From assembly GCA_000388065.2 (NCBI GenBank), contig KB932203.1: a stretch of 64,000 bases of DNA. One strand, written 5' to 3'. This document shows positions 1-38,846 of this stretch, piece after piece (position 1 is the first letter of the stretch; the number at the start of each line of letters is the position of its first letter). The notes below the pieces were generated by a model, which searched no databases, was not told where the DNA came from, and worked only from the letters and a program-made list of their open reading frames with translations. The position numbers were made by a program, and so were the translations under genes. This stretch comes from Fonticula alba ATCC 38817. Its lineage: Eukaryota; Protista; Nucleariida.

Positions 1-2702
1 CACGGCCTGCCGGCGCGTCAACTACCCCCCGCCCCCCGCCCGCCCCTCGCGAGCGGAGAAGCGAGGCCGTTCTCTCCTGGGTCCTCGGCCCGGCGCACGC
101 ATCAGAGCCCAGCCCCCGGAACCCCCACGGGACCCCCCCTTCCGGCGCGCTCACTGGGACCCACGAGCACAGGCGACAACCCCACCTTGAAGAGTGCGCT
201 TTCCCACCGTTCTTCTTCCACCGGGAGGAAATGGGCCCGCCGCTGGAGGATGTGGAGGGGGGGGGGGGGGGGGGGGGGGGCGGGGACCATGCGACCGGGT
301 CTGCCTTCGGGCCCGGGAGGGGGCAGGCGGATCAAGATCCCAAGTACACATTCTGGACTCTCGGGCGAAGAGCGCACGGGCGGGGGCGCGACAAATGTCC
401 CCAAGAGGCGGCGCTTGGATTCAGCTAGAAGCGCGCCCCGCTGGCCAGATCGAGCGGGGGACACCTGGACGCGAGGATGCAAGGGGGAAAGTGGGGTGGG
501 GGGGGGGGGAGGAGGGCGGCCCCACAGTCCTTCTCTCCAGAAACACATTACCATGCAGTGCCCCCGCTAGGGGATCTCGCATGCGATCCCCCCCCCCCCG
601 CCCTGCCCCTTCGCCGCGCACTGGCGCCAGGAGAACCCCACGGCAAGTGATCTGTAGCGTCGGGAAAAAGAGACCCCTCATCCCCCTTGGACAAATAATC
701 AAGTGCCAGCCCCTCCACCCCGTAATAGTGGCGCATTCCCTGTGACATTCTCCCTCGCCTCAGCCGAGGCGAATGTCTCCCCCCCCCCCCCTCTGTAGCC
801 TCCCTTGCCCCCGAGTGGCATCCCCACGCGCTGGACGCAACAATGAACTCAGCAGATGGGATTCGCTCTGTTGCCGCCCCCCCCCCCCCCCCCCCCCCGG
901 CCCAGAGCCCGCCTCAGCCGAGTCTTCCTCTCTTGGCCCCCCCGCCTTCTCTCACACGCATCTGCAAATGAACCAGAAGCCACCTGACATAGGGTTGGCA
1001 GCTCGGCCATGGGTTAATTTAAGCCGATCTCACTGGAGGAACGCCGACCGGCGGCTTGGAGGGGGGGGGGGCGGCGATGCCCGGGGTACACCAGGCGGCC
1101 GGAGAGAAGCGCCCAACGGGAGGGGACAGGAGGGGAGGCCAGAACCCGAGCCCCCCTCCCCCCCCCCCCCGCCCGACTGTGAGGGCCACGGAGGGAGGGC
1201 GCGAACAGGACAAGAGGCACCCCCCTGCTTGAGAAGCCGCCACGCAGACCGGCGAAAACCCGCGAAATAATAATGTTAAATATCAGTGGAGCACCCCGCG
1301 TGTGTGCTGGTCACAAAAAGCGAAGAAAAAAAGGAGGGTCCCTTGCCCCACACGACGATCCTCGTTACCCTGTTAAGAGGCCCTCCTCCCCCGGGCCCAG
1401 GCAGCCAGGGCCATAGACGCGGCCGTACCCCCCTCCCTCCCCCCCCCCACCTGGCGCCAAGCGAACAATGTTCTCCTCGGGCGCAGCCCTGCTGCTACCG
1501 CCGCGCGGGGGACACCAGGATGCGCGCGGCCAGACCCACAACACAGCGAGCAACAATCGCGGCGCCGGCCGTGGTCGGGCTATATGGTCGGGGCCCCGGG
1601 ATTCAAACCCAAATCCCGGCTTGCCTCTCCCCTGCCTGTGCCGCTCTTGGGGAGTTCTCCCCGTCCCCCCCCCCNNNNNNNNNNNNNNNNNNNNNNNNNN
1701 NNNNNNNNNNNNNNNNNNNNNNNNNNNNNNNNNNNNNNNNNNNNNNNNNNNNNNNNNNNNNNNNNNNNNNNNNNNNNNNNNNNNNNNNNNNNNNNNNNNN
1801 NNNNNNNNNNNNNNNNNNNNNNNNNNNNNNNNNNNNNNNNNNNNNNNNNNNNNNNNNNNNNNNNNNNNNNNNNNNNNNNNNNNNNNNNNNNNNNNNNNNN
1901 NNNNNNNNNNNNNNCCGTCGGCCCTCCTGCTCGTGTCCGCCTTGATCCGCTCTCGCTGCTGCCTCCTTTCCACCCCCCACCCCCGGGTCCTGTGCCCCAC
2001 AGCGGAGCCCAGGTGTAACTCGCTTCTCCACCATACGTCTGGTGTCTCCCGTCCCCGCCTCCCGACATGCCCGCTGAGAAAAAAAAACAACTTCGAGCCA
2101 ACATACACAGCACCCCAGACTAGTGGGGGGATGGGACGCCAGCACCGACCAGCTCTCCCCACACAAGAGCCTGCCGGTGACGAACACACTGCCGGGCTCC
2201 ATACGCACTCTTTGCCCCCTCTCGGGCTTTCCTCCTGCATGGTCGACACTCACCTTTGAAGCCTTCGACGCCCCCCCGCCCCCCTCGCCACTTCTGGACT
2301 TACTCCTTCGTCCTCGTCCCGTCGATCGCAGTTCACCCTTCGCCGGCTGAATCGGCGAGGGCGGCGCGCGGGCATCTGCGAGACACACGCCGCACAAAGA
2401 GGTCACATGAGGAACACACCATACCGAAATACAAACTCAACATCACTTAATCAACATGTAATGACATAAATATGTCACATGAACAACCAACTCGCCGAGC
2501 GAACGGCGTGCCCTTTTCCGCCCCGAAGCCCGCATGGCGGCTGCCACTTTTCCAAACTTCCATCCTCCCTGGGACTGGACCAGGACGGATGAGCGGGGGG
2601 TGTTGCGCCGACACGCGCCCGCGCGTCCCTGCGAGCGCGTGGTCCCCGAATGTCTCTTTTCCGCGGGCCCCGAGGCTGGGCACCCTTTTCTAGCAAGTCC
2701 CT

Positions 2703-2736
<34 letters not shown>

Positions 2737-3225
2737 CCGCGCGCACCCGCCCGCCCCCGCCGCCCCCCCAGCATTCGTGTCGAGCCCAGAGAGCGCCCTG
2801 GGCAGAGCAAGAATGGGGGAGTGCAGAATGCCCCCTCTCTCGCGCGCGCGCGCATGCGTCCACGCGTCCACGCGTCCGCAACAGGGCCCAAACTCCTGGG
2901 AGAGGGGGGAGCCGGCCACAGCCCCGGATCCCCCATCCTTGATCGGATCTTCCACACCCCCCCCCCCCCACACTCGCCGCCCCCCCTCCCGAGAGCCTAT
3001 TCGGCCCGTCGAAGCAACAATAGAGTGGGTCTTTTTCAGGCCGTGCACCATCTTTAGCCGCAAGCCGGCCCTCAGACCTACCCCGACACCACCTCCACCT
3101 CGTTGGCTCATCCATCCAACCTCATTGTGCTTTTTTCCCCCTCCCCTCCCCCATACACACACACACACACACGCACATCGCCCCTCTCCCCCCCGTTCGA
3201 GCGCCGCCACCCGCCCTTCCCCATC

Positions 3226-6200
3226 ATGGCTCCTCGCCAGCAAGACAAGGTAGATCTCTCTCTCTCCCTCTCCCTCTCTCTTTCTCCCTCTCTCTTTCTC
3301 CCGGCCTTTCTGCGTGCTCCCCGTCTCCTCCATCTCCCACTCGGTCACTCACCCCCCCCCCTCCTCTCTCCCTTTCTTTGTCCTCCTGTCCCACCCTCCT
3401 CCCGCAGGCCAAGAGCGTGGCCGCCCCGGGCAAGACGAAGTCCGCGAGCGCCGCCACCGCGGTGACCAAGCAGCACAAGAAGGCTGACAAGTCGCAGCAC
3501 AAGAAGAAGCTCCTCGCTGCGGCTGCCGAGAAGAAGGCCAAGCAGGCCGCCAAGCAGGAGGCTGCCGGCGCCGCGGACGCCGGCGCCGCCGAGGAGAAGC
3601 CGGCTCCCACCATCAAGTTCACCCCCTCGGACACCTTCCAGAAGGCCTCGGCCTCCGGTTTGGTGGAGCTCCTTGGGCAGTTCGTCGATGCAGGCTCCAA
3701 GGCCCCCGCCAAGATCCCGGGTCTCTCCAAGGCCATTCTCGCCAAGGCGGCGCAGGTCCAGCCTGCGACTGAGGTGCGTGCCGATCCCGCCCCCTCCCCC
3801 CCTCTCCCGTTGTGTTTGTGCCCTTTTGTCTCCCTCCCCTCTCCCTCTGCCCCCGCTGACATCGTTCGCCCCCCCCCCCCCTCCCCCTCCCCCCCCCCCC
3901 AACCCCACCGACGAGATGGCCTACCTCCTGCGACGCTGCATCCGTGGTCTGGCCTCGTCCGAGGTGACCCTGCGCGGGCACTTCGCCGAGCTGCTGGTCC
4001 AGCTGACCGGCGCCCATGCGCAGGCCCTCACCTTCGCCACTTTCGCCGACCTGGCCGAACAGAACCTCAACACCCGGACCTCGGAGATCCGCGACACGGT
4101 CCTCACGCCGGCCCTCTGTCTCCTGACGACGGTTCTCCTCCGGACCGGGCTCCTCTTCGCCACGCCCGAGGGCTTCACCGCCTGTCTGGATCGCCTGCGC
4201 GAGCTCTTCACTCCGAAGCGTGCCACCCGGCAGGACGTCATGCCCGTGTACCAGGCCATCCTGGCCGAGTGCCTGTCGGCCAACGGGGCCGAGGATGATG
4301 ACCCCCGCGCGGCTCTTCTGCCGGTGCTGCTCGAGCACCTGGCCGCCCTGGTCCGCCTGGACGTCCTGAGCCCGGAGCTCATTGCACTTGCGGTGCAGCT
4401 GACCGACCATGCGGCCGCCGGGGTGCTGACTCTGCCGGCCAAGGCCAACCTCTTCCCGCAGCCCACCTGGGCCGCCAAGACCGCCGGCTGCCTGGCGCAC
4501 CCGTCCAACATTGACCTGGCCATCATGGTCATCCTGGACGACACGCAGGTGTGCCTGAACATCGAGCACCCGCTGTGGCGCGCGCTGGCCAACAACTTTG
4601 CCCGGCGCAGCAACGGCCCGAAGGCCGTGTCCTGGGTGACGCACAGCTTTGCCGCCTTCTGGTCGAAGATCTTCGAGCAGGGTCTCCTCCAGGTGGAGAA
4701 CTACACCAAGCTCGAGCTGGCGCTGACCTTCGTGGCGCAGCTGGCCGCGGCCGGTGCCTCCGGTAGCGTCCTCTTCCAGGCCCTCTCGCCGAACCTGGTC
4801 TACCAGTTCCGCCGGGCTCTGGTCACCACCAAGAAGCCGATCCATGCCCCGGCCATGGCGCTGGTGCGTTTGTGCCTCTTTTTTCCTTCTTTCTCCCGCC
4901 CTCTCTCTTTCTCACACATGCCCACCCACAACCTCCCTCTCTCTCTCTCTCTCTCTTTCTTTATTTCTTTCTCTCTCTCTTTCTCTCTTTATTTATTTAT
5001 TTATTTCCCTCTCCCTCTCTTTCCCTCTCCCCCCCTCTCTTTCCCTCCCCCCCCTATCTCTCTCTCTCTCCCTCTCTCCCTCTCTCTCTTCCTCTTCCTC
5101 TCCCCTGCCCTCCCTTCTTTGCCAGATGAATGCCCTGATTGCTCGCTGTGCTGGTGATGTGGAGCTTACCCTGCAGATGTCCTTCTGGACGGTGCATGCG
5201 TACCTCCCGCGCGCCTTCTCCACCGCGGCCAAGAAGCAGCTGCTGTCCTTCCTGTATGCGGCGCTCCCCAACCGGGTCGCCCTGCTTGCCCGGCTTCAGG
5301 AGCTCTTCTACGACCCGCGCCCCCTGCTGGCTCGTTACCTTCAGGCCACCGGCGGGCAGAGCCGCAAGTCCTCGGCCGCCGAGGAGGCCGCCAACCCGGC
5401 CCTCGCGGCCGAGGCCGCCGCCTCCGCCCAATCCCAGGAGGCACACCTGGCCAACAGCCTGCGTCTCTTCCTGCTGGATCACATGCAGATGATCCTGCGC
5501 CAGTCCGACAGTGTCAGCACCCTGGTCGAGCCGCTGCTCAGCCTGGCCCTGTGTGTTGGTCACTTCCAGGTCAGCCCCGAGGCCAGCCTCAGCAGCGAGG
5601 GGAGCCTGGCGGTGCCGGCCGCCCTGCAGGCCGAGGCCACTCGGCCGGCCCCGACCCCGGCCTTTGATGCCCGGGTGCGGTCCGTTTCGCGGACCGCCCT
5701 GTCGGCCCTGCTCTTCGCCGGGTGCCAGCTGGCCCCGGGGCAGGCGACCGCCGCCCCCCCTGCCGCCAGTGGCGGCCCCGCTGGCCATGTGACCCTGTCC
5801 AGCAAGCTCGAGGCCAGCATCCGGCTGATGCGTCTCGTGGGCGACGGGTTCATGGCGCTGGCCGGTGCCACGGCCGGCGTCGTGAAGCTGGCCCGGCCGA
5901 CCGATGAGCTGGCTGTGCCGGAGCCGGCGGTCGACCCGGCTGACGAGGTGGCCGCCCTGGTCGAGGCCCATGGGCTGCTGACTGCCAGCCTGGCCGCCGT
6001 GGCCAAGCAGCGCGGCCAGCTGGCCGCCGATGATGCCACCAGCCCGGCGTACCTGACCGTGTTCGAGCTCCTGGCGCGGACTTTCTTCTTCCAGGTGTTG
6101 GTGGGCGAGCTGCCGATCGAGGGGTTCACCGATCAGCTGAGCGATCTGGACCAGGCTCGGGCGGCGCTCTTCCCCAAGCCCTCTGGCCGGGGGAAGGCCC

Positions 6201-24503: not shown

Positions 24504-25749
24504 TCACTGGATGCGCTCCTCGCCCTCGCGGACCTCACGCAGAGACAGGAACTTCAGCTGAACCTGACCGCGGGTCTCCTGATTGAGGGTATCATTCAGA
24601 GGGCCAAAGGCACCGGGGTCGATCAGGGCCGTGAGCTGGAAGTCCGACGAATAATCCTCGCTCTCGATTGAAGAAAACAGCGGGCGGATTTTTTCCTGGC
24701 ACACAGCCCCAGGAGAGGGACATCAGGGAGTCGGAGGGATGCAAGAGAGAGAGAGAGAGACAAAGGAGTTAGTTCCCGGTTTAAAGCCGAGGCCGCACGA
24801 TCCCGGGCAAGGGTCGACCCTGGCAGGGGGGGGGGGGGAGCCCAAAATAAGGTGCATCACGCACCATCAGGCGCTTGGCGTCGCGGGCCGAGTCCATCGT
24901 CACGGAGACACGCATCTGCGCGCGAGAGATCGGCAGGACGCCGCTGGTCCGCAGAGTACGGATGGCCTCCAGGGCCTGCTGCTTGACGGCGTTGGTGCTG
25001 CTGCTGGCGCTGCCGCCGGCATTGGCCTTCGGCGTGAATTTGGCACTGGTCATGGCCTTCTGGATCATGGTCACCGGGTACGGACGGTTGGTCTCCGGGT
25101 TGATGCACATGTCCGACACCATTTGGGCCACCTCGCGCGAAAGGTTCTCCGAGTGCTGCTGGCGCTCGCGCTCGGCGACCTGGAACTCGCCCTTCTCGAG
25201 GATCTGCCCCCACGCAGAAGAAGAGGAGTTAGCATGGGATGGGCGAGGAGCCGGCGCCGATAGGCAGACATGGCTAATGGGTCGGGACACACCTCGAGGA
25301 TGATCTTCTTCACGTCGTCCGTCTTGAAGGCCTTCATCAGCTGCTCCTTGTTGGGGACGGTGCCACGCGAGACATTCAGGAAAACGTTGTCGATCTGAAG
25401 GACATTGTCGATGTTGGTCTCGCTGCGAACAAAGATTTAGTGGGGTTTGGGGAGGGAGGGAGAGCGAGCGAGAGAGCCAGAGCGGAGGGGAGAGATGACG
25501 CGATAGAGGAGCGACACCCGAGGGAAAGGTGCGGACAGTAGCACAGAGGCCGGTGATTAGTCAGGCGCAGCAGGGACCAGGCTCTCGGGGNNNNNNNNNN
25601 NCATGGACAGGACAGGCTGACACGCACACACGGTTACGCCACTCCATCACCTTGTTCTTGTAGCAGGCGATCTCAAAGCGGATGCCACCCTTACGCAGGC
25701 GGACAATGGACACATTGGTCAGGCGGATCTGGTTCATCGGGGTGAACAT
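24504..25749 (-). CDS. SBDS: Ribosome maturation factor SBDS/Sdo1, ~260 aa, 4 exons (25749-25628, 25422-25293, 25203-24865, 24695-24504)
   Basis: [67 protein letters not shown] and LIDPG are diagnostic. Exon phases sum to an intact frame. Confidence 0.97.
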
Positions 25750-28535: not shown

Positions 28536-31500
28536 CGGCTCCAGGCACACGCACCACGCTGTTGCTGAGGTTGACAAAGGCACACACACCGGTGTTCGGG
28601 GGAATGATCGGGGCGTAGAAGGTGGCATTGCAATGCATGTGCTCCGGGGTGTACTTGAGCATGCGGTTGCGCTGGCCATCGTCCTTGATCGACAGAAGCG
28701 GCGTCGCCTGGAAGCGCCGCCAGCCGACCGACAAGACCAACGGGTCCTGGTTCTTCAGGATCTTCTTGTACCAACGGTGCTTCTTCAAACGAATCTGAAT
28801 AAAGCCGACGGTGTCCTCGCCCGGAAGCAGAGCACCAACCACAATCAGGTACCGGGGGTCGAAGTGCTGGACAAACTCGCACGGCAGGCCCTCGAGCACG
28901 ATGCGCACATACTGCCCCGGCTGGTAGCCGATGAACTGGGCACGCATTTCCGGGGCAATGTCCTCGAACTCCTGGCGGTTGAACTGCTGCTGCTGCTCGA
29001 TGGCCTTCTTCTGCCGGTCGAAGTCGGTCTCTTCCTTGTCCTCGGCCCCGGCGCCGCGTGACTCGTACTCATCGATGAAGCGCTGCTTGAGCAGCTCCTT
29101 CTTGCGCTGGAGCTCCTCCTCGGTTGGCTCATCGCCGCCCTCATCGTCACTGAGGATGGAGTCTCCGGCCCCGGCGGCGGAGGCGCCGCCGCCGCCGCTG
29201 CCATCCTCATCCTCCAGGTCCTCGAAGTCCCCGGTGGCATCGTCATCACTGCCGGCACCCGCGGCAGCACCCTCGGCCCCGGTGTCGCCGGTGATGAAGC
29301 GCGACCGCAGCGAGGCCAGGAAGTCCGGATCCTCCCACAGATCGGCATCGGCCACATCGCCACCCAGGTGCAGGTTCAACTTGGCCCCGTCGTCCATGTG
29401 GGCCAGCTGGCTGCTGGTCGAGGAGCGCACCTTGCGGAAGCCATCGGCATCCGGCTTGCCCGCCGACCCGGCATCCTCCTCGGCCCCATCACCATAGACC
29501 AACTTCTGCAAGTTGACCCGGCGATTGACCTGCATGCGCTCGGCCAGTGAGTCGATGTTGGCACGCCACTTGGTCTCGGAGGCGTCAGCGATGCCGGCAT
29601 CCAGATCCATGCGGTCGGGGTTGTAGACGAAGTCCGCCAGGTCCGGCTCGTCGTCGTCGTCGCCGTCGTCGTCGTCATTGCCATCGCTGGCGTCGTCGCT
29701 CTCATCCTCCTGCTCATCAAGCTCGGAGTCGGTGTCGGCAAAGGCCAGCTGCCCATCATCGCCATCCTCCTCGTCCAGGGCGCCAGTGACGTTGGCCCGG
29801 CGGATGCGCTTCTGATGGGTCTCCTCGTCGATGTCCTCGTCCTCGTCGAAATTCTCCTCATCATCCTCATCCTCATCATCATCGTCCTCGCCGTCGGAGA
29901 TGGTGTCGTTGAAAGAGGAGTTGGTGCCGTCCTCAAAGAGGGCACGGCGGCGCACGCGCGGCGCGGCCTTGTCCAGGGCAAACTCTGGAGCCAGGCATGT
30001 CGTTCGAAGGTAAGCGAAGGTAGAACCGATGAGCAACACCACGGGAACCGGAGGGTGGGGAGGGGGGGGGGCGGGGGCAGAAGAAGGCAAAGGAGGGAAG
30101 GTGATACGCACTGGCGCGCGCCTCGGAAGCCAAAACTGGGGCCGAGTCCTGGAAGATCTGCAGCTCACTCTCCTCCAGCTTATCGGCCAGGGTGTGTTTG
30201 CTGTCCTGCAGCGAGATGACCATCTGATCGCCCTCACTGCGCTCCACTGTGCGACGAGGCACACGCATGGTCCATTGAGAGAGAGAGAGAGAGAGGATGG
30301 ATGGGTCAGCATTAATCCGGGGGAGGGGGGGGGAGGGGCAAAAGTACCGGCCCGCCCGCGAGGGGACATGTGACCGGCGAGCACGCACTATCAACCTCGA
30401 GGCCAGAGCCATCGGACTTGCGCTGGTACACACCCGGAACCTCGACATAGACACTGTCGCGATCATAGGTGATCTCGCCAATGTCGGACATCTACGCCGG
30501 GACCAGGAAAGGGAAGAGGGGCACCGAGAGGAGGCGGAGCAGGGCGGGAAAGACGGGAGTTAGACATCCGTACAATTCATGTGTCAAAAAAGAAGTCGAA
30601 GGAAGGGGGGGGGGGCGATGGCGCCAAAGGGCGGGCTGTCATACCGGAGCATAGATGAGCTTGTGCTTCTGGTCCAGGCGCTTGGCCACCTTGTCCGGCA
30701 GGGGGCACGGGTCCTCCAGAGCCGACACCTCCTTGATGGCGAAGTCGCCGACACCCGGGAGATGAACCTTCTGGTGGGACTTGAGGTTCGTGCCACGCAC
30801 ATAGCCATACAGGGCCACGGTCCGGTCACAGTGGACATCCCGCTCGATCAGGTGCGGCTGGGTGATGTCCTCCATGCGATCGGCCACCACATGCGAATGG
30901 CTGTTGCGCCAGATGAGCGGCCGGAACTTCATGACCGAAATGAAGCGCGACAGGTTGTTCACCTCCATCTTCGGGTAGCGCCCATTCAGCAGACCACTCA
31001 GGTAGAAAAGCTTGGCTCCCTCGTAGATCTCGGTCCAGAAGCTGCGACATGTCAGAACACCGGGCCGGGGCCGGGGCCGGGGCCGGGGCCATGGGCAAGG
31101 GGGCCGGCCTGGAGGGCGGGAACAAAGGCAAGGACATTTGAGACGGACCGCTGCTTGAGGCGCTTCTTGTGCTTGCGAAGGCTCTTGTCATCGGCAAAGC
31201 CATCCAGATGAGTCAGGACACCCATGATCCGAGGGAAGCCATGGGTCTGGCAAAGGTTCAGGAACTCGAAGGTCTCCTGCGGGTGACCAGAAGGAAGGGA
31301 GAGAGAGGGGGGCGGGGGGGGGGGGGAGGGGGAGGAGAAGGGACATCAGCAAGCAGTGACAATAGATGTCGTCGGGTGAGGGGGAAGGAGAAAAGTGCAC
31401 NNNNNNNNNNNNNNNNNNNNNNNNNNNNNNNNNNNNNNNNNNNNCGGGCGCGGCGGGGGGGCGCACTGCGGAAGGAAAGGACCACGCCCACAGCCTGCCC

Positions 31501-33441
31501 TTGCCGGGGGCGGATGGGGCGGGCGGGGGGATTGCACCCATGCTGGGGGGCGGGGGAGGGGGCGGGGAACGGCAATTCCCGCTTCGGATGGTCGGGTGGC
31601 CGGGTGGTCTCCGCGCTCCGGCCGGGTGCCGCGTGTGCGTTCTCACGTGCGGCGCAAGCGTTGGGACTTGGCCCATCCGATCAACCTGCATGGACGAAGG
31701 CCGGGGCTGGCTCCGGGAGCCGAGGAGAGGGGAGGGGGGCCAGGCATCAAGCAGGGCGCGCCCCGGTTCACCGCAGGGGGACACCCTCGCCCTCCCCCGG
31801 GCACACCCATCCCCAGATCTATCGTAGGTGGGGGGGCAGGGGGGGCTGATGGGCTGGCAGCACGGGCGTTCGAGCACCTGGCCCGCCGGGCAGCCCTCCT
31901 CCCTCACTCCGCTGGCCATCCCCGCGTGCCTCTCTTCCCTGCCCTCTGCCTCCTATTCTGCCGAGTTTGCCCTGCCCCCCCCCCCTGCCGCCCCCCCTTG
32001 CGCATCCCGTCCGTCCTTCGTCCTGTAGGCCGGCCTTGTCGAAGAGATGGACCGCCGGATGGCCGCCCGCCGGCGGCTGCCGCTGCTGCGGCCCCCGCCA
32101 GACCCCTTTGCCATCGGGTTTGATTTCGCCCGCTTCACCAATCTCAACCTCGAGCAGGATAGTCTCCTGCTTGCGGAGCATGTCCGTCGAGCCATCCTGT
32201 CGCATGACTTCGCCACCGCGGCCGCCGGTTGCTCGGTGCTCCTCCGCCGTGGGGCCCCGCTGGAGCCCTCCCTCTGGCATGTGGTCCTCGGAGCCTTGCA
32301 GGCCAATGTGGCGGACGCGGTCCGTGCGGAGCCCGGCAGGACAGGCCCCGGATCGCCTGCTCATCACCATGATCCCATGCGGTCTGCCAGCGCGCCGGCC
32401 TACCTGTCGGCGGCCAAGGAGTTCGTGCAGGGCGTCCTGGCGCCGCACCTCGGGCCGATGGCTCTCATTGAGGCATGCTTCATGCTGGCCTCTGAGGGGC
32501 AGACTGCCGATGCCCTGGAGTTGCTGAGCGTGTATGTGTCCACCCCCCTCTTCTGGGTCTTTTGCGCTTGCTCTCCCCCCCCCCCTCCTCCTCTCCCTCC
32601 CTACGCATGCTGACGGCTGCCATTCTGTCCTGCCTGTCGCCCTCCTCCCCCCCGGCCAGGGACAGCAAAAGGAGGACGAGGAACACGCACCATCTCGAAG
32701 CCGAAGCTGGCATCCACCATGAGCAGAACCAGGTCCGCGGTCTTGGCGCAATCGATCATGGAGTTCATGTCATTGCCACACTCGAAGAAGGTCAGGCGTC
32801 GGCTCTTGCCGGAAACCACGGTAATCGGGCCGTTGACCTCGCGCAGGTTCTGCTTGGTGTACTTCTTCACCAGGGACTTGATGAGGGTGGTCTTGCCGAC
32901 GCCGGGCGGGCCGACAACGCCAATCATCACGGGCGGGGCCTCGGCCGCCGAGAGGCCAGCCGTGCGGCTCGCCATCGGGGCATGCATGCGGCGCTCGGCC
33001 TTCTCCATCTTGTGCTGCTGGGCGCGCATCATGCTGCGACCAGAGGCAGCGATGAAGGCCTGTACGCAGGGAGACCCATTGTGGAGGGGGATACATGAGG
33101 AGGGGAATCGTGCGCAGGGTGCGGAGCGGGAGGCAGGCGCGATTGTGTGCGTGGATGCGTGTGTATGAATGGGGGGCCGAGTGAGAAAGGAAATCGCAGA
33201 AGAGGGAGAGAGAGAGAGAGAGAAAGAAGGACAGAGAGGAACAGGGCATGTGGGGAGGCGGACGAACCTTCGGGTTGCGGCGGCGCTCGGCCTCAATGTC
33301 GCGGGGGGCATCCTTGTCGCGCTTGGTCGGGCGCTCGGGGATGGCTGTCCCGCCGGAATTGGCTGCCAGACGGTCGACCTTTTGCTGCTTCTTCTTGGCC
33401 AAGCGCACATTGTGCTGCTTGTGCGTCTGAGAGTCGGCCAT
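26738..33441 (-). CDS. BMS1: BMS1 ribosome-biogenesis GTPase, ~1187 aa, 11 exons (33441-33268, 33059-32691, 31276-31149, 31041-30645, 30491-30389, 30246-30112, 29984-28555, 28028-27924, 27787-27622, 27510-27260, 27043-26738)
   Basis: P-loop GPPGVGKTTLIKSL; TFFECGNDMNSMIDCAKTADLVLLMVDASFGFEMETFEFLN; RFWTEIYEGAKLFYLSG; KKHRWYKKILKNQDPLVLSVGWRRFQ; RMLKYTPEHMHC; FEGAKIRTVSGIRGHIKK. All ten introns are GT..AG with consistent phase. Confidence 0.97.
28200..28530. repeat. (GA)n/(GAAA) microsatellite in BMS1 intron 7, interrupted by an N-gap (28238-28361)
   Basis: Read directly. Confidence 0.95.
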
Positions 33442-36400
33442 GGTGGCTCGCAGGTGGTGGTGGTGGAAAGGCCGGAAGCCCGGGGTGGAACCAAAAGCCC
33501 GGAGCGGGGTGGGTGAAAGGAGCCGGAGGTGGAGGAGAAAGCAATGGGAGGGGGGCTCCGTGAAGAGGGGGAAGGGGGAGGGGGGAAGCTAGAAGGGGCA
33601 GAGGGAGAGAGGAAGGGGGACAGGAGGAGCTATGACCTCCTTTCGAGGGTGGTCACACACTGACAGGGGTCCTTTTGACCGGGCGGGAACAGGAGGCGGG
33701 CGAGATACGGGGGGGGGGNNNNNNNNNNNNNNNNNNNNNNNNNNNNNNNNNNNNNNNNNNNNNNNNNNNNNNNNNNNNNNNNNNNNNNNNNNNNNNNNNN
33801 NNNNNNNNNNNNNNNNNNNNNNNNNNNNNNNNNNNNNNNNNNNNNNNNNNNNNNNNNNNNNNNNNNNNNNNNNNNNNNNNNNNNNNNNNNNNNNNNNNNN
33901 NNNNNNNNNNNNNCCCCCCCCCCTCCCTCCCTCCCGGTGGCTTTGCCCGAAGAAACATCAACGATGCGCGATTCTTCCAAAGCGCCAACTGCCATGGGTA
34001 CCTCGGCTTGCTTTACATTCACCAAGCCATCAGTGCGGCAGCCAACAGCAGCGCCACTTCGCTGGCTGGTGCTTTGCGCCGGGCAGCCAGCCGGCGCCCC
34101 GCCCCGGTGGATCGCCACGATGCTCGGAGCTTGGCCGGGTTGCTGGCCGACCGTCGGCTCCGGGCCGATGCCCGCCGGGTGGTTGTGGCCGCCCTGCCAC
34201 GGGTCCCTTCGGCCGGGAGTGACCTGCGCTCGGCCGAGCGGCATCTCCGCCGGGCGGCCGAATTGGATCCCCAATCCGAGGCCTGGGTCTTTGGCCTATG
34301 GCAGCTGTATGGCCTGGCTGGGCGGCTGTTGACGCGGTCATCGCGTGAGCGCGGCCCTCTTGGCCTGGTCGTTCGCAGCCACCTTCGCACCTTTCTCAAA
34401 GCCAATCCGGACAACCTGGCCGGCTGGGTGTATGTCTCCCATGCTCGCTTTCTCTCTGCTTCTCTCTCTCTCTCCATGTTCCCCTTCTTGCCCCTCCCCT
34501 ATGCGGCCATAACCATAACCGCCATTGACACGTACGCTTCGCCCCTCTTGGCCCTTTTTTCGACCCTCCTCTCGATGGCCGTCTCCAGCATGTACCATGA
34601 CTTTCTTCAGGCATCGGCCGAACTGTCGAGCCAGCGCGCGCCCGGGCGCTCGAACGCCCTGGTCATGGCCGAGGCAGCCGGCAAGGCGCCGGACTCGGCG
34701 GATCCCCGGCCGCGCTTGGATCCGTTGCACTTCTCGTCGCTGGGCCGAGCATCGGCCAAAATCGCCCGGCTCGATCCCCTTTGTCGGCGCCTGATCTATG
34801 AGCAGGCGCTGCTGCATTTGATGCGCGAGGCCGTGGGTGCTGGCGCCGCCATCCCCGGGAGTCAGCGTTTCTCCTCCACCGGGCCCCTGTCGGCGGGGTC
34901 CTTCGCGCACCTACGTCGGGCATTGGACCTGGCCCAGTGCCGGCTGCTGGCCCTCCATGCATCGACCACTGTGCACTATCGGTGTAGGACGGCCGGCGCG
35001 CGGCCCATTGCTCTGGACACGCCTCGGCCATCGGCCGGCGATCCCTGGGCCGAAATGGCGGCCCTCGGTGTTCGATGGCCGGCGGACTTGTCGCTGCTGA
35101 TCAACCGGCTGTCCACCGACCGGCCGGCGCCAGCGCGGCATCTCCATCGGAAATCCTACTGGCAGCAGCGTCCCTGGACTGGGCGAAACTTTGGTGCACA
35201 CGCGCGCGACCTGCCCGCCCAGAGTACCGCCGACGTCATTGGCCTTCAGGATACGCCATCCATCCGGGCGTCGTTGGCGGAGAGTCACATTGGCGGCTGG
35301 CAGCCGCTGCTTCCGCTTCAGAGTGAGCATCTTGCCCAGTTGGCCGGGACCGCCGGCGGGGGCTGCCATGCGCAAATCGAGGCATCAGACTGCTTGGATC
35401 TCGGCCACCGGGCTGCCGAGGCCGAGGCGCGCGAGCTGCTGCAGCTCTGGCGCCAAGCCTTGCGACTGGGCATGATGGCGGTGGGCCCCCCCCATCCCGA
35501 CACCACACGGACCTGGCCCGGCGGCGCGCCCCAGGCGGCCGAGCATCTGGCCGAGCTCCACCGAGCGGCCTCGGCCCCGGGCGCCGAAAGCCGGCATTTC
35601 CCCAGCAGCACGGCTTCCTGGCTGGCGTCGATGATTGCCCTCATCCCCGAGGCGGGTCTTGGGCAATCGCACGCGGTCTTCAACCACCTTACTCGGCCAA
35701 GCGCAAGCACAGGTGCCACTCGGCCGGCCACTTGCCACTGGTCATACGGCGATGGTCCGATGGATCTCTGGGACCCGGCGATCCAGCAGGCGCGCCATTC
35801 TGCCACCACGGCCGTTGCCTCGGCCGGTGCGACGGTGGCCCGGGCCGACGCCCGTCCGGGCAATGTTTCACCTTTCCCCGGCTCGGCTTCCGCCCGTTCC
35901 CGGTCCTCCCCCGCGAGCGACACCTCCTTTTCAGATCACTCGGATGGGGCATCCAGCTCCCATTCCCCTTCAGACCCCCCGTCGGATCCCTCTTCGGACT
36001 CCTTGACAGACTCCTCCTCGGGCTCCTCCTCAGATTCAGATGGAGCCCCCTCCCCGCCCGTGGAATCCCCTGCCCTGGATGCCGATGCCCCCTCCGCATG
36101 CTCAGCCCCGGGAGGGGGATGTTCGTGTGCTGGGCGCGTTGCTCGGATCTGGGCGGCCGTGGTGACCTGCCAACTGCTGGTGGCGGTGCTTCTTTACGCA
36201 CCGCAGCTTTGCGCCCTTCCCGATCCCACCGGACTGCAGGGGCTCCTTCGGCACTTGAAACGAGCCACGCACCCGGCACACACGTCGACCACCGATGGCG
36301 GCCGCCCTCCGTTGCCGATGCGCCTGTTCAACTTCCTCTGGGGTGGCTTCTCCGGGCGGGGGTTCATCCCCCTGTGGCTGCTTCGAGGGGAGCTGGCCGA

Positions 36401-37472: not shown

Positions 37473-38846
37473 TCACACGAGGGCGAAACCGATGGGCTCT
37501 TCCAGCGCGCGGCGAATGCGCTTGAGTGCCTCGCGCCCACTACGATAGCGCGGCACGGCAAACAGACGAATGCACGTGTGCGCAGAGGGGAGGACCCGCT
37601 TCGGGAGATAGTGATGTGGGCACATGCGCACCGGGGCCTGTGCATAGGTGGCGCGCTCGTCATCGGAGTCGGTGCGCGGCTCGTCCATATCCTCATCGGT
37701 GCTCAGCTCCGAGTGGTTGTACACCCCCTTGCACTTGCACATGAGGCTGGGCGCCAGGCGAGAAACATCCGACCTGAAGACGCTGCTCTCGGAAGCAGGG
37801 CCACCGGTGTGCCGGTCGACCATGGCCGCGGGGATGTCACCCTCCGAAGCCGAGGCAGCGGCAGTCGAGGTGTCGGAGGACACCGATGGCCGATCGACCG
37901 CCAGGAGCTCCTGCTCTCCTGGTGGAAGGGGAGAGGGACTCCGCGAGGCAGGGGCACCCGAAGGCAACATGATATCCGCCAGCTCGGTGGCGAACACCGC
38001 GGCAGACACGGCAATATCAAGGATGCCCATGCTGCCATCTGGGGCCTCATTGTCGCTGTCCTCGGTGTCACTGCTGTCCGCATCATCGCCGCTATCATTG
38101 GCCCCGGGCTGGTCGCCCTGCTCAAGGGCATCGGAAGTGACACGGGGAGATCCATCGGAAAGGGTGATCCCCTCGGAGTCGCTCGACAACGACATGACAT
38201 CATCACCGACTCGCCAGGTGGGGTCCGGCTGCGAGGTCTCCCCGGCGGAGGAGGAGGCCTCCAAGTCGGAGGAGGAGGCCTCCAAGTCGGGGTCATCCTC
38301 CACCGAAGTCGAGGAGTCCGAGTCGGAGGCCACATCGGTGCTCGACAAATCGGACGAAGAGAATGTCGGGTCGGGCTCGGACTCGGAAGAGTCGGTCTCC
38401 ATGACGCGCGAGAGGCCGATCTTGATCGAGGGCGGACCGCCCCAGAATGAGGAGGATTGCCCGGCACAAATGAAGCGCACCAGGCGATCCAGCTCTCGCG
38501 GCGTCAGACACCGAAGGGCCCGGACAAAGCGCCGCATGGCCGGGTGGCGGCGCTTTAGCGGCAACAGCAAGATCGACCGATCCAAGATGTCATCAGCCGT
38601 GAAGTGGGTACTCCGTGCCTGGAGCAGCTCCCCTGGTGAGGATGCCGTCAGGGCGGGGGTCGGCTGCAGAAGTCGAGCCAGGGCACGGGGCTGCCGAAGG
38701 GCGCGAAGGAGCAGGAGCAGGAGAGACAAGCAACAAACCGAGGAAAGAGGGAGAGAGAGGGAGAGAGAGAGAGAGGGAGGGAGAGAGGGTTAGGCTGACG
38801 GATGGGTCGCGGACTGGATGCCTGCAGGGCAGACCGGGAAGGAGAA

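What the first reader, a model, noticed from the sequence alone, without database searches (positions are those of the whole stretch)
31277..33952. Interleaved head-to-head ribosome-biogenesis genes: BMS1 and a TAF1A/Rrn11-like gene each start inside the other's intron
Seen: BMS1 intron 2 (minus strand, 32690-31277, 1414 nt) contains exon 1 (32047-32531) and the upstream region of the plus-strand TAF1A-like gene. That gene's intron 1 (32532-33952, 1421 nt) contains BMS1 exons 1-2 and the BMS1 upstream region. Both joins restore conserved motifs (GFEM|ETFEFLN; LELLSV|NINDARFF..GYLGLL). The other modelled introns are only ~89-526 nt. Inference: if real, the two pre-mRNAs overlap antisense for at least 1.39 kb with no exon-exon overlap. 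That would couple a Pol I initiation factor to a 40S assembly GTPase through transcriptional interference or co-regulation. Caveat: the segment is one contig between gaps 31401-31444 and 33719-33913, with an abrupt C-rich to purine-rich switch at 32653/32654. Swapping its two halves (31445-32653 and 32654-33718) gives two ordinary introns of ~161 nt plus gap and a ~0.9 kb bidirectional promoter. A circularised mate-pair chimera would produce exactly this. I rate real versus artefact at roughly even.
Basis: partly seen in the sequence, partly recalled or inferred. Interest (0 to 1): 0.85.

Follow-up and report, generated by a model that had tools for sequence, protein, structure and literature searches.

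The report
Assembly artefact mimicking interleaved genes
The apparent interleaving of BMS1 and its neighbour in the Fonticula alba reference genome is most likely a wrongly joined small contig, and the real locus is probably an ordinary head-to-head gene pair with two short introns.

Summary
The window is Fonticula alba GCA_000388065.2, scaffold KB932203.1. BMS1 (minus strand) has a 1,414-nt intron 2 holding a coding-looking plus-strand exon (32047-32531). That exon can splice over BMS1 exons 1-2 to 33953.

The join 32653|32654 that creates this layout has no read support. No listed contig from eight public runs carries it. In two source-sample runs and one independent run, the ten letters left of 32654 are GGGGGGGAGG, not the assembly's CCTCCCCCCC. 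A second independent contig also stops aligning at 32654.

The source runs link the two halves at three other, mutually incompatible junctions. One of those contigs also carries a proven circularisation junction (38154|32092), which marks a jumping library. Such junctions read downstream|upstream, so they place 32654-33718 upstream of 31445-32653.

The swap gives both introns normal length (161 nt plus gap) and normal strand composition. It joins G-run to G-run and C-run to C-run, and leaves a shared promoter region of about 0.95 kb. I put an artefact at about 0.9.

BMS1 is confirmed. The TAF1A/Rrn11 label is not: the neighbour has no detectable homologues and only faint TPR-like features. Interest is low.

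The parts
33268..33441 (-). BMS1 exon 1 (58 codons, ATG at 33441)
   Evidence: Exact spliced alignment of annotated protein P0001; translation.
33060..33267 (-). BMS1 intron 1, 208 nt, GTTCGT..CAG, rich in C and T on the coding strand
32691..33059 (-). BMS1 exon 2 (P-loop GPPGVGKT; ends ...DASFGFEM)
   Evidence: The motif runs on uninterrupted in the intronless relative L001.
31277..32690 (-). BMS1 'intron 2' as assembled (1,414 nt, 44 of them N). Probably about 161 nt plus a gap of at least about 120 nt in the real genome.
   Evidence: a length outlier, with C = G = 0.34 against C 0.42-0.47 in the other gap-free introns. Only its two end pieces (32690-32654 and 31400-31277) look like intron on the minus strand.
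31149..31276 (-). BMS1 exon 3 (starts ETFEFLN)
32047..32531 (+). Putative first coding exon (161 codons plus 2 nt) of the plus-strand neighbour. It is absent from the public annotation.
   Evidence: ATG start, GTATGT donor and in-frame join to 33953. Coding periodicity and best codon score in this frame. No homologue and no RNA evidence obtained.
32532..33952 (+). Neighbour's 'intron 1' as assembled (1,421 nt, 195 of them N). Probably 161 nt plus a poly-C tract in the real genome.
   Evidence: Pieces 32532-32653 and 33914-33952 are about 80% C+T on the plus strand, like the gene's other introns. The acceptor is AAG rather than YAG.
33953..34429 (+). Neighbour's exon 2. The annotated model (P0227) instead starts at 33964 in another frame and uses a 29-nt 'intron'.
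31445..32653 (.). Segment Y: left half of the contig between the gaps. It holds the upstream region and exon 1 of the plus gene and the start of its intron. It probably belongs to the right of segment X.
   Evidence: contigs are continuous inside Y up to 32616, and none runs from Y into 32654 as the assembly does. The 63 letters left of 31445 are a G-rich run plus 40 nt.
32654..33718 (.). Segment X: right half of the contig. It holds the start of BMS1 intron 2, exons 2 and 1, and BMS1's upstream region. It probably belongs directly after the 31400 side.
   Evidence: contigs of X2, X3, X5 and X6 are continuous inside X and leave the assembly exactly at 32654.
32644..32663 (.). Unsupported junction 32653|32654 (record positions 3187799|3187800)
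   Evidence: The assembly reads CCTCCCCCCC|GGCCAGG. X2, X3 and X5 read GGGGGGGAGG|GGCCAGG. X6 stops aligning at 32654.
31401..31444 (.). Assembly gap 1. The missing sequence is longer than the 44 N written.
   Evidence: An X2 contig runs 112 letters past 31400 without reaching 31445 or 32654.
33719..33913 (.). Assembly gap 2, flanked by G10 on the left and C10 on the right

Best explanation
The 2.27-kb contig between the two gaps (31445-33718) is a chimera. Its two halves, Y (31445-32653) and X (32654-33718), are joined in the wrong order.

**Proposed true order**
- The order is ...31400 / gap ending in a G-run and AGG / X / poly-G plus about 40 nt / Y / poly-C / 33914...
- The locus is then a plain divergent pair: BMS1 on the minus strand and an orphan, faintly TPR-like gene on the plus strand.
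- The distance between the two start codons is about 0.95 kb.
- BMS1 intron 2 is about 161 nt plus a gap of at least 120 nt.
- The neighbour's intron 1 is about 161 nt plus a poly-C tract.

**How the false join probably arose**
- Both real continuations run into G or C homopolymers that Illumina reads cover poorly.
- In a jumping (circularised mate-pair) library, reads that cross the circularisation point join the end of a fragment to its start.
- These reads offered the only continuation at those dead ends, and the assembler took one.

**Shown and inferred**
- Shown: the assembly's junction is absent from read contigs, the flank of 32654 is different, circularisation junctions occur in contigs of this locus, and both intron length and composition are anomalous.
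- Inferred: the exact true order, and that the assembler used a junction read.
For: 1. Junction test. No listed contig of X1-X8 carries 32653|32654.
   - X2 (2,029-nt contig) and X5 read GGGGGGGAGG before 32654.
   - The 33 letters before 32654 in X3's 1,099-nt contig end the same way, if its single mismatch is C31551>G.
   - X6's contig also stops aligning at exactly 32654.
   - X2 and X3 are from the source sample. X5 and X6 are 2025 samples filed under another organism.
   - X2 and X3 contigs run past 32654 without a break, so the assembly's path is not a retained branch in those runs.
2. The source runs link Y to X at three other, mutually incompatible points:
   - 32539 + GGGGGGGAGG + 32654 (X2);
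   - about 31550 + GGGGAGG + 32654 (X3);
   - 32604|32887 (X4), which would delete part of BMS1 exon 2.
   - At most one of these could be genomic.
3. The X4 contig with 32604|32887 also begins with 30 letters identical to 38125-38154, joined to 32092.
   - This is a same-strand downstream|upstream junction, the signature of a circularised fragment.
   - Read the same way, every Y|X junction requires Y to lie downstream of X. The implied fragments are 1.2-2.3 kb.
4. Contig depth in X and Y is not twice that of the flanks, so a tandem duplication is not the cause.
5. Homopolymer continuity.
   - X ends in G10 or more, and the sequence left of 31445 is a G-rich run of about 23 letters plus 40 nt.
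   - Y ends in C7, and 33914 starts with C10.
   - The assembled order instead abuts a C-run to a G-run, and a G-run to a C-run.
6. Gene structure.
   - BMS1's other nine introns are 107-526 nt. The eight without a gap have C 0.42-0.47 and G 0.13-0.26 on the coding strand.
   - The neighbour's other introns are 147 and 159 nt.
   - Both 1.4-kb introns are outliers. After the swap, each consists only of pieces about 76-80% C+T on its own strand.
7. Unchecked first-reader notes report other permuted or misordered small contigs in this assembly.
Against: - A 2,029-nt contig from the source sample (X2) does place Y before X, as the assembly does, though at a different junction.
- The library types of X1-X4 are not on record. 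If X2 and X3 are plain fragment libraries, their Y|X links are unexplained under either order.
- The implied fragments (1.2-2.3 kb) are shorter than the one proven jump fragment (4.8-6.1 kb).
- Three fragment starts fall within 11 nt of each other (32644-32654). I explain this by selection: only junctions at a dead end survive in the contigs. That is inference.
- No contig was seen that positively joins 31400 to X, 33718 to 31445, or 32653 to 33914.
- Only assembler contigs could be laid, not raw reads of the source, and the output tables were truncated.
Confidence: 0.8

Rival explanations
1. The interleaving is real. Y does precede X in the genome, and the assembly is wrong only locally at 32653/32654, where a hard-to-sequence C-run/G-run structure has been lost. 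Each gene then starts inside the other's 1.4-kb intron, and the two pre-mRNAs overlap antisense.
For: - The assembler's contig and the X2 contig of 2,029 nt both have Y before X.
- The public annotation accepted the 1,414-nt BMS1 intron.
- No contig positively showing the alternative adjacencies was recovered.
Against: - It needs three different 'deletion' artefacts of about 100, 282 and 1,100 nt in the source runs, all spanning one spot. The largest cannot arise within a short-insert library molecule.
- The simplest version, with the assembly's CCTCCCCCCC directly followed by GGGGGGGAGG, is contradicted. X2 reads T, and X3 reads more G, to the left of that G-run.
- It needs a C-run abutting a G-run at one join and a G-run abutting a C-run at the other.
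- Both genes would hold a tenfold outlier intron whose composition flips exactly at the suspect junction.
- The X4 junction 32604|32887 sits in a contig with a proven circularisation junction. It is impossible as such a junction under this order.
Confidence: 0.08
2. The contig is misassembled in a more complicated way than a two-piece swap. For example, only 31445-31544 lies left of X, and X is followed through poly-G by 31545 onwards. The G-rich run at 31545-31567 would be a second false join. The genes are still a simple divergent pair.
For: - In X3, the 30 letters left of X's G-run match 31525-31554 with one mismatch.
- Another X3 contig has 30 letters left of 31545 that do not fit the assembly.
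- Several contigs of different runs start or end at 31545-31567.
Against: - X1 (31445-31581) and X2 (from 31536) read straight through 31544/31545 as the assembly does. X7, an independent soil sample, covers 31445-31567.
- The X3 link has only 30 letters on its left side. It fits equally well as a jump junction at about 31550.
Confidence: 0.07

Closest known systems
Chimeric contigs and misordered small contigs in short-read assemblies built with jumping (circularised mate-pair) libraries
   Same: - A same-strand junction joins a downstream position to an upstream one (38154|32092 in a read contig).
- The false join lies between two gaps, at homopolymer dead ends.
- The contig reads as a circular permutation of the expected order.
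   Different: - The assembler and library types were not on record in the tools.
- That the assembler itself used a junction read is inferred, not shown.
Divergent (head-to-head) gene pair with a shared bidirectional promoter region
   Same: After the swap, two start codons about 0.95 kb apart face away from each other. The strand composition switches once, near 31850, between them.
   Different: - Co-regulation of the two genes was not tested.
- The partner gene's function is unknown.
Nested or interleaved genes (a gene, or its first exon, lying in another gene's intron), as known from animals
   Same: The assembled letters mimic a reciprocal version of this arrangement.
   Different: The DNA continuity that defines it is contradicted by reads at the one junction that creates it.
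BMS1 / Bms1p, the GTPase of the 90S/40S pre-ribosome
   Same: - The P-loop G domain, AARP2CN and the RIBIOP_C domain are present.
- It has full-length relatives across eukaryotes at 31-51% local identity (bit scores 95-296).
   Different: Nothing unusual, apart from a long acidic insert that is common in the family.

Membership tests
BMS1 ribosome-biogenesis GTPase | C-terminal Tsr1/BMS1 domain (Pfam RIBIOP_C, PF04950) | tested here: met
   E = 2.9e-46 and 1.9e-19 on the two large ORF pieces. Also precomputed on P0001.
BMS1 ribosome-biogenesis GTPase | N-terminal Bms1-type G domain with P-loop, and an AARP2CN domain | tested here: met
   GPPGVGKT lies in exon 2, with P-loop family hits. PF08142 and PF00009 are recorded on P0001.
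BMS1 ribosome-biogenesis GTPase | Full-length similarity to named BMS1 proteins of other eukaryotes | tested here: met
   110 hits, many named BMS1, mostly 1,100-1,300 aa.
TAF1A / Rrn11 (Pol I core factor / SL1 subunit) | Match to the family's Pfam model | tested here: not met
   No Pfam family at E <= 0.01 on the 1,013-aa read-through, nor at E <= 1 on the annotated 898-aa protein. Only TPR_14 and TPR_2 at E = 0.06-0.4 on exon 2.
TAF1A / Rrn11 (Pol I core factor / SL1 subunit) | Sequence similarity to any known member, including chains in solved structures | tested here: not met
   phmmer against 1.84 billion representatives found only itself plus repeat noise. phmmer against PDB chains found only TrkH at E = 0.15. 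The exon 1 search found nothing.
TAF1A / Rrn11 (Pol I core factor / SL1 subunit) | Helical/TPR fold matching Rrn11 or TAF1A | tested here: inconclusive
   The single-sequence AlphaFold2 model is all-helical but has mean pLDDT 36, too poor for a fold search. The Atlas gives generic TPR-like neighbours at 0.88-0.94.
Interleaved / nested gene pair | Independent DNA evidence that the host intron and the guest exon are contiguous | tested here: not met
   No listed contig from eight runs carries 32653|32654, and at least three runs read different letters there.
Interleaved / nested gene pair | Transcripts of both genes spliced across the other gene's exons | not tested
   The BMS1 splice is in the annotated protein, but a splice does not tell the two DNA orders apart.
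Jumping-library circularisation chimera | Same-strand junction joining a downstream position to an upstream one a few kb away | tested here: met
   The X4 contig reads 38125-38154 | 32092-32604.
Jumping-library circularisation chimera | The assembly's own junction traced to such a read, and the library type known | not testable with these tools
   Library descriptions are 'not on record', and only assembler contigs of the source runs were available.

The most novel reading that the evidence does not exclude
The two genes really are interleaved in Fonticula alba. Each promoter and first exon(s) would sit inside the other gene's intron, around a structure-prone C-run/G-run that defeats short reads. 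Transcription of the 40S-assembly GTPase and of its orphan neighbour would then interfere with each other over about 1.4 kb.
Probability: 0.08. Interest if true: 0.6.

Novelty: not a real feature. Interest (0 to 1): 0.1.

Why it matters
If real, reciprocal interleaving of two genes in a compact protist genome would be a rare architecture with built-in antisense coupling. The evidence says it is not real.

The value here is practical:
- It flags a chimeric contig in the only F. alba reference, at KB932203.1:3186591-3188864 with the false join at 3187799|3187800.
- It shows that the annotated 1.4-kb BMS1 intron is an artefact.
- It shows that the neighbouring gene model (P0227) probably lacks its true first exon and begins with a patched 11-residue start and a 29-nt 'intron'.
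- Unchecked notes on other pieces of this genome suggest the same kind of local permutation recurs. Unusual gene structures next to small gap-bounded contigs in this assembly should therefore be distrusted.

Tried and rejected
- **Exact-product look-ups.** I looked up the 223-aa ORF in X and the 188-aa ORF in Y to fetch real contigs. Nothing is on record.
- **Homologue searches to recover gene calls on read contigs.** The exon 1 ORF and the ORF crossing 32654 gave no near-identical hits. Exon 1 had no hits at all, and the best BMS1-fragment hit was 66% identical. No independent long contig could be fetched.
- **Metagenome scan with BMS1 exon 2.** It returned one distant, intronless relative (L001, 75% identity) with only about 350 nt upstream of the gene. 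That is useless for gene order, though it confirms DASFGFEMETFEFLN is contiguous.
- **Newer F. alba assembly.** A literature search found none. The 2026 preprint that mentions F. alba re-sequenced Acrasis kona.
- **Raw-read runs of 'organism B'.** These belong to a large-genome organism in which F. alba is only a passenger in one study.
- **Tandem duplication of X and Y.** Rejected on depth.
- **Simple 10-nt palindrome omission at the junction.** Rejected, because X2 and X3 do not read C to the left of the G-run.
- **An RNA gene as the reason for a long intron.** No Rfam match in 30500-35000.
- **Fold test of TAF1A-likeness.** Abandoned, because the model had pLDDT 36.


Full report
**What the window is.** The 26.7 kb I could compare is letter-for-letter identical to Fonticula alba GCA_000388065.2, scaffold KB932203.1. 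Window position c equals record position 3155146 + c. The window is 65% G+C and has ten N gaps. Two of them, 31401-31444 and 33719-33913, bound a 2,274-nt contig.

**The observation.** The minus-strand gene is BMS1.
- Its large ORF pieces hit RIBIOP_C at E = 2.9e-46 and 1.9e-19, and exon 2 carries the P-loop.
- The annotated protein H696_02454 (P0001, 1,187 aa) aligns to BMS1 of many eukaryotes.
- Threading P0001 exactly onto the DNA gives 11 exons. The introns are 208, 1414, 107, 153, 142, 127, 526 (124 of them N), 136, 111 and 216 nt.
- Its join, GFEM|ETFEFLN, is uninterrupted in an intronless relative from a metagenome.

On the plus strand, an ATG-initiated exon at 32047-32531 ends at a GTATGT donor. 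It joins 33953 in frame.
- Its codon-position G+C is 0.75/0.51/0.80, and its codon score is best in that frame. It is therefore probably coding.
- The public annotation does not use it. The neighbour (P0227, 898 aa) starts at 33964 in another frame, with 11 residues and a 29-nt 'intron'. That start looks like a patch.

So the letters are as described.

**Testing continuity, as the scan's note asked.** Public runs that hold this stretch include four from the source sample (X1-X4, 2012). They also include four 2025 runs filed under another, large-genome organism (X5, X6, X8, X10), which hold F. alba at about 3-6x where laid, and soil and sediment metagenomes (X7, X9). Only assembler contigs of these runs could be laid. 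Across eight runs, no listed contig carries 32653|32654. Instead:
- X5 (156 nt) and X6 (460 nt) stop aligning at exactly 32654. X5 continues with GGGGGGGAGG where the assembly has CCTCCCCCCC.
- X2 (2,029 nt, depth 39) also reads GGGGGGGAGG immediately left of 32654. So does X3 (1,099 nt, depth 47), if its one mismatch is read as C31551>G.
- The X2 and X3 contigs run on past 32654 without stopping, so the assembly's path is not even a retained branch in those runs.

**The complication.** Source-run contigs do link Y (31445-32653) to X (32654-33718) in the assembled order, but at three other places:
- 32539 + GGGGGGGAGG + 32654 (X2);
- about 31550 + GGGGAGG + 32654 (X3, with only 30 letters on the left);
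- 32604|32887 (X4), which would remove 196 nt of BMS1 exon 2 and cannot be genomic.

With the assembly's own junction, that makes four mutually exclusive joins. Depth in X and Y is no higher than in the flanks, so there is no duplication that could hold both orders.

**What explains four local, same-strand, inconsistent joins.** The 30 letters before 32092 in the X4 contig match 38125-38154 exactly. The junction 38154|32092 joins a downstream position to an upstream one on the same strand. That is what a read across the closure point of a circularised (jumping-library) fragment looks like. X4 therefore contains such junctions, in the very contig that also carries 32604|32887.
- A circularisation junction always reads end-of-fragment | start-of-fragment. 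Each Y|X join is therefore possible only if Y lies downstream of X.
- The implied fragments, each plus the X-Y gap, are about 1.2, 2.0, 2.2 and 2.3 kb.
- Under the assembled order these joins would have to be deletions of about 100, 282 and 1,100 nt around one spot. I see no mechanism for that in short-insert libraries.
- The junctions probably survive in contigs, and in the assembly, because they sit at dead ends. X's left edge runs into a G-run. Y's right end runs into C-runs at 32575-32588 and after 32653.

This last step is inference. The library types are not on record. The implied fragments are shorter than the one proven fragment (4.8 kb under the swap, 6.1 kb as assembled). These are the main weaknesses of the argument.

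**Independent lines pointing the same way.**
1. Homopolymers match under the swap.
   - X ends in G10 or more, and the 63 letters left of 31445 in an X1 contig are a G-rich run plus 40 nt.
   - Y ends in C7, and 33914 begins with C10.
   - The assembled order needs a C-run against a G-run, and a G-run against a C-run.
2. Introns here are strongly C/T-rich on their own strand. The eight gap-free introns of BMS1 other than intron 2 have C 0.42-0.47 and G 0.13-0.26.
   - As assembled, BMS1 intron 2 has C = G = 0.34.
   - After the swap it consists of 32690-32654 and 31400-31277, at 76-80% C+T on the minus strand.
   - The neighbour's intron 1 then consists of 32532-32653 and 33914-33952, at 77-80% C+T on the plus strand.
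3. Both genes lose a tenfold length outlier at the same time. The neighbour's other introns are 147 and 159 nt.
4. An X2 contig runs 112 letters past 31400 without reaching either 31445 or 32654. Gap 1 is therefore longer than its 44 N under either order.
5. Unchecked first-reader notes on other pieces of this genome describe permuted or re-orderable small contigs.

**The resulting picture.** The locus is an ordinary divergent pair. The distance between start codons is 277 + about 70 + 602, or about 0.95 kb, with one composition switch near 31850. BMS1 intron 2 is 161 nt plus at least 120 nt of unsequenced G-rich DNA. The neighbour's intron 1 is 161 nt plus a poly-C tract. I put an artefact of some kind at about 0.9, and the simple two-piece swap at about 0.8.

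**The partner gene.** The TAF1A/Rrn11 label found no support.
- There is no Pfam family on the annotated protein or on the read-through ORF. Exon 2 gives only sub-threshold TPR hits.
- There is no PDB relative.
- phmmer against 1.84 billion representative proteins returns only the protein itself, plus ubiquitin-repeat and TPR noise.
- Exon 1 finds nothing.
- Language-model neighbours are generic TPR or helical-repeat clusters at scores that shuffled sequences also reach.
- A single-sequence AlphaFold2 model is all-helical but unreliable, with pLDDT 36.

It is best called an orphan, possibly TPR-like protein. The proposed functional coupling of Pol I initiation to 40S assembly has no basis in this data.

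**Verdict.** The letters are as described, but the biology is not. This is most likely a chimeric, circularly permuted contig in a short-read draft assembly. The useful outcomes are a correction to the reference and to two gene models.

Noticed in passing
window 33964-34026: The public model of the neighbour gene (P0227, 898 aa) starts with 11 residues (MRDSSKAPTAM) read in a different frame and then uses a 29-nt 'intron' (33998-34026). This looks like a prediction patch, made because the likely true first exon (32047-32531) was stranded on the far side of BMS1 exons 1-2.
   Followed up: yes
window 24504-25749 (minus strand): An SBDS gene (SBDS_N, domain II and C; 60S maturation) lies directly downstream of BMS1 (40S maturation) on the same strand. 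That puts two ribosome-biogenesis genes in tandem. The 11-N gap at 25591-25601 lies inside it.
   Followed up: no
window 31445-33718, runs X5-X10, X15 and X25: Near-identical F. alba DNA (0-3 differences per contig) occurs in 2025 runs filed under another, large-genome organism, at about 3-6x in the three that were laid. Soil, sediment and wastewater metagenome runs hold it too, and the one soil run laid shows about 4-5x. The species or a very close strain seems widespread, and it is a passenger in someone else's samples.
   Followed up: partly
window 31887, 32143, 32521: Single-base differences from the reference recur across the independent runs: C>T at 31887 in X5 and X8, C>G at 32143 in X6 and X8, and T>C at 32521 in X5 and X6. 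These are probably strain polymorphisms. X2, from the source sample itself, shows G>C at 31990 and one base fewer at 31975, inside a C-run, which may be reference errors.
   Followed up: no
window 31401-31444: Gap 1 is written as 44 N, but a source-run contig extends 112 letters beyond 31400 without reaching known sequence on either candidate far side. The gap length is therefore underestimated.
   Followed up: partly
L001 (Ga0308021_10008895), 280-3936: This metagenome contig holds a BMS1 gene read as a single open frame of about 1,200 codons, with no intron, at 65.6% G+C. It is 75% identical to F. alba over the G domain. The organism is unknown.
   Followed up: no
window 31060-31092: BMS1 intron 3 contains a short (GGGGCC)n-like tandem run. 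G/C-rich low-complexity runs are common in this genome's introns and drew thousands of spurious contig matches when reads were laid at 90% likeness.
   Followed up: no
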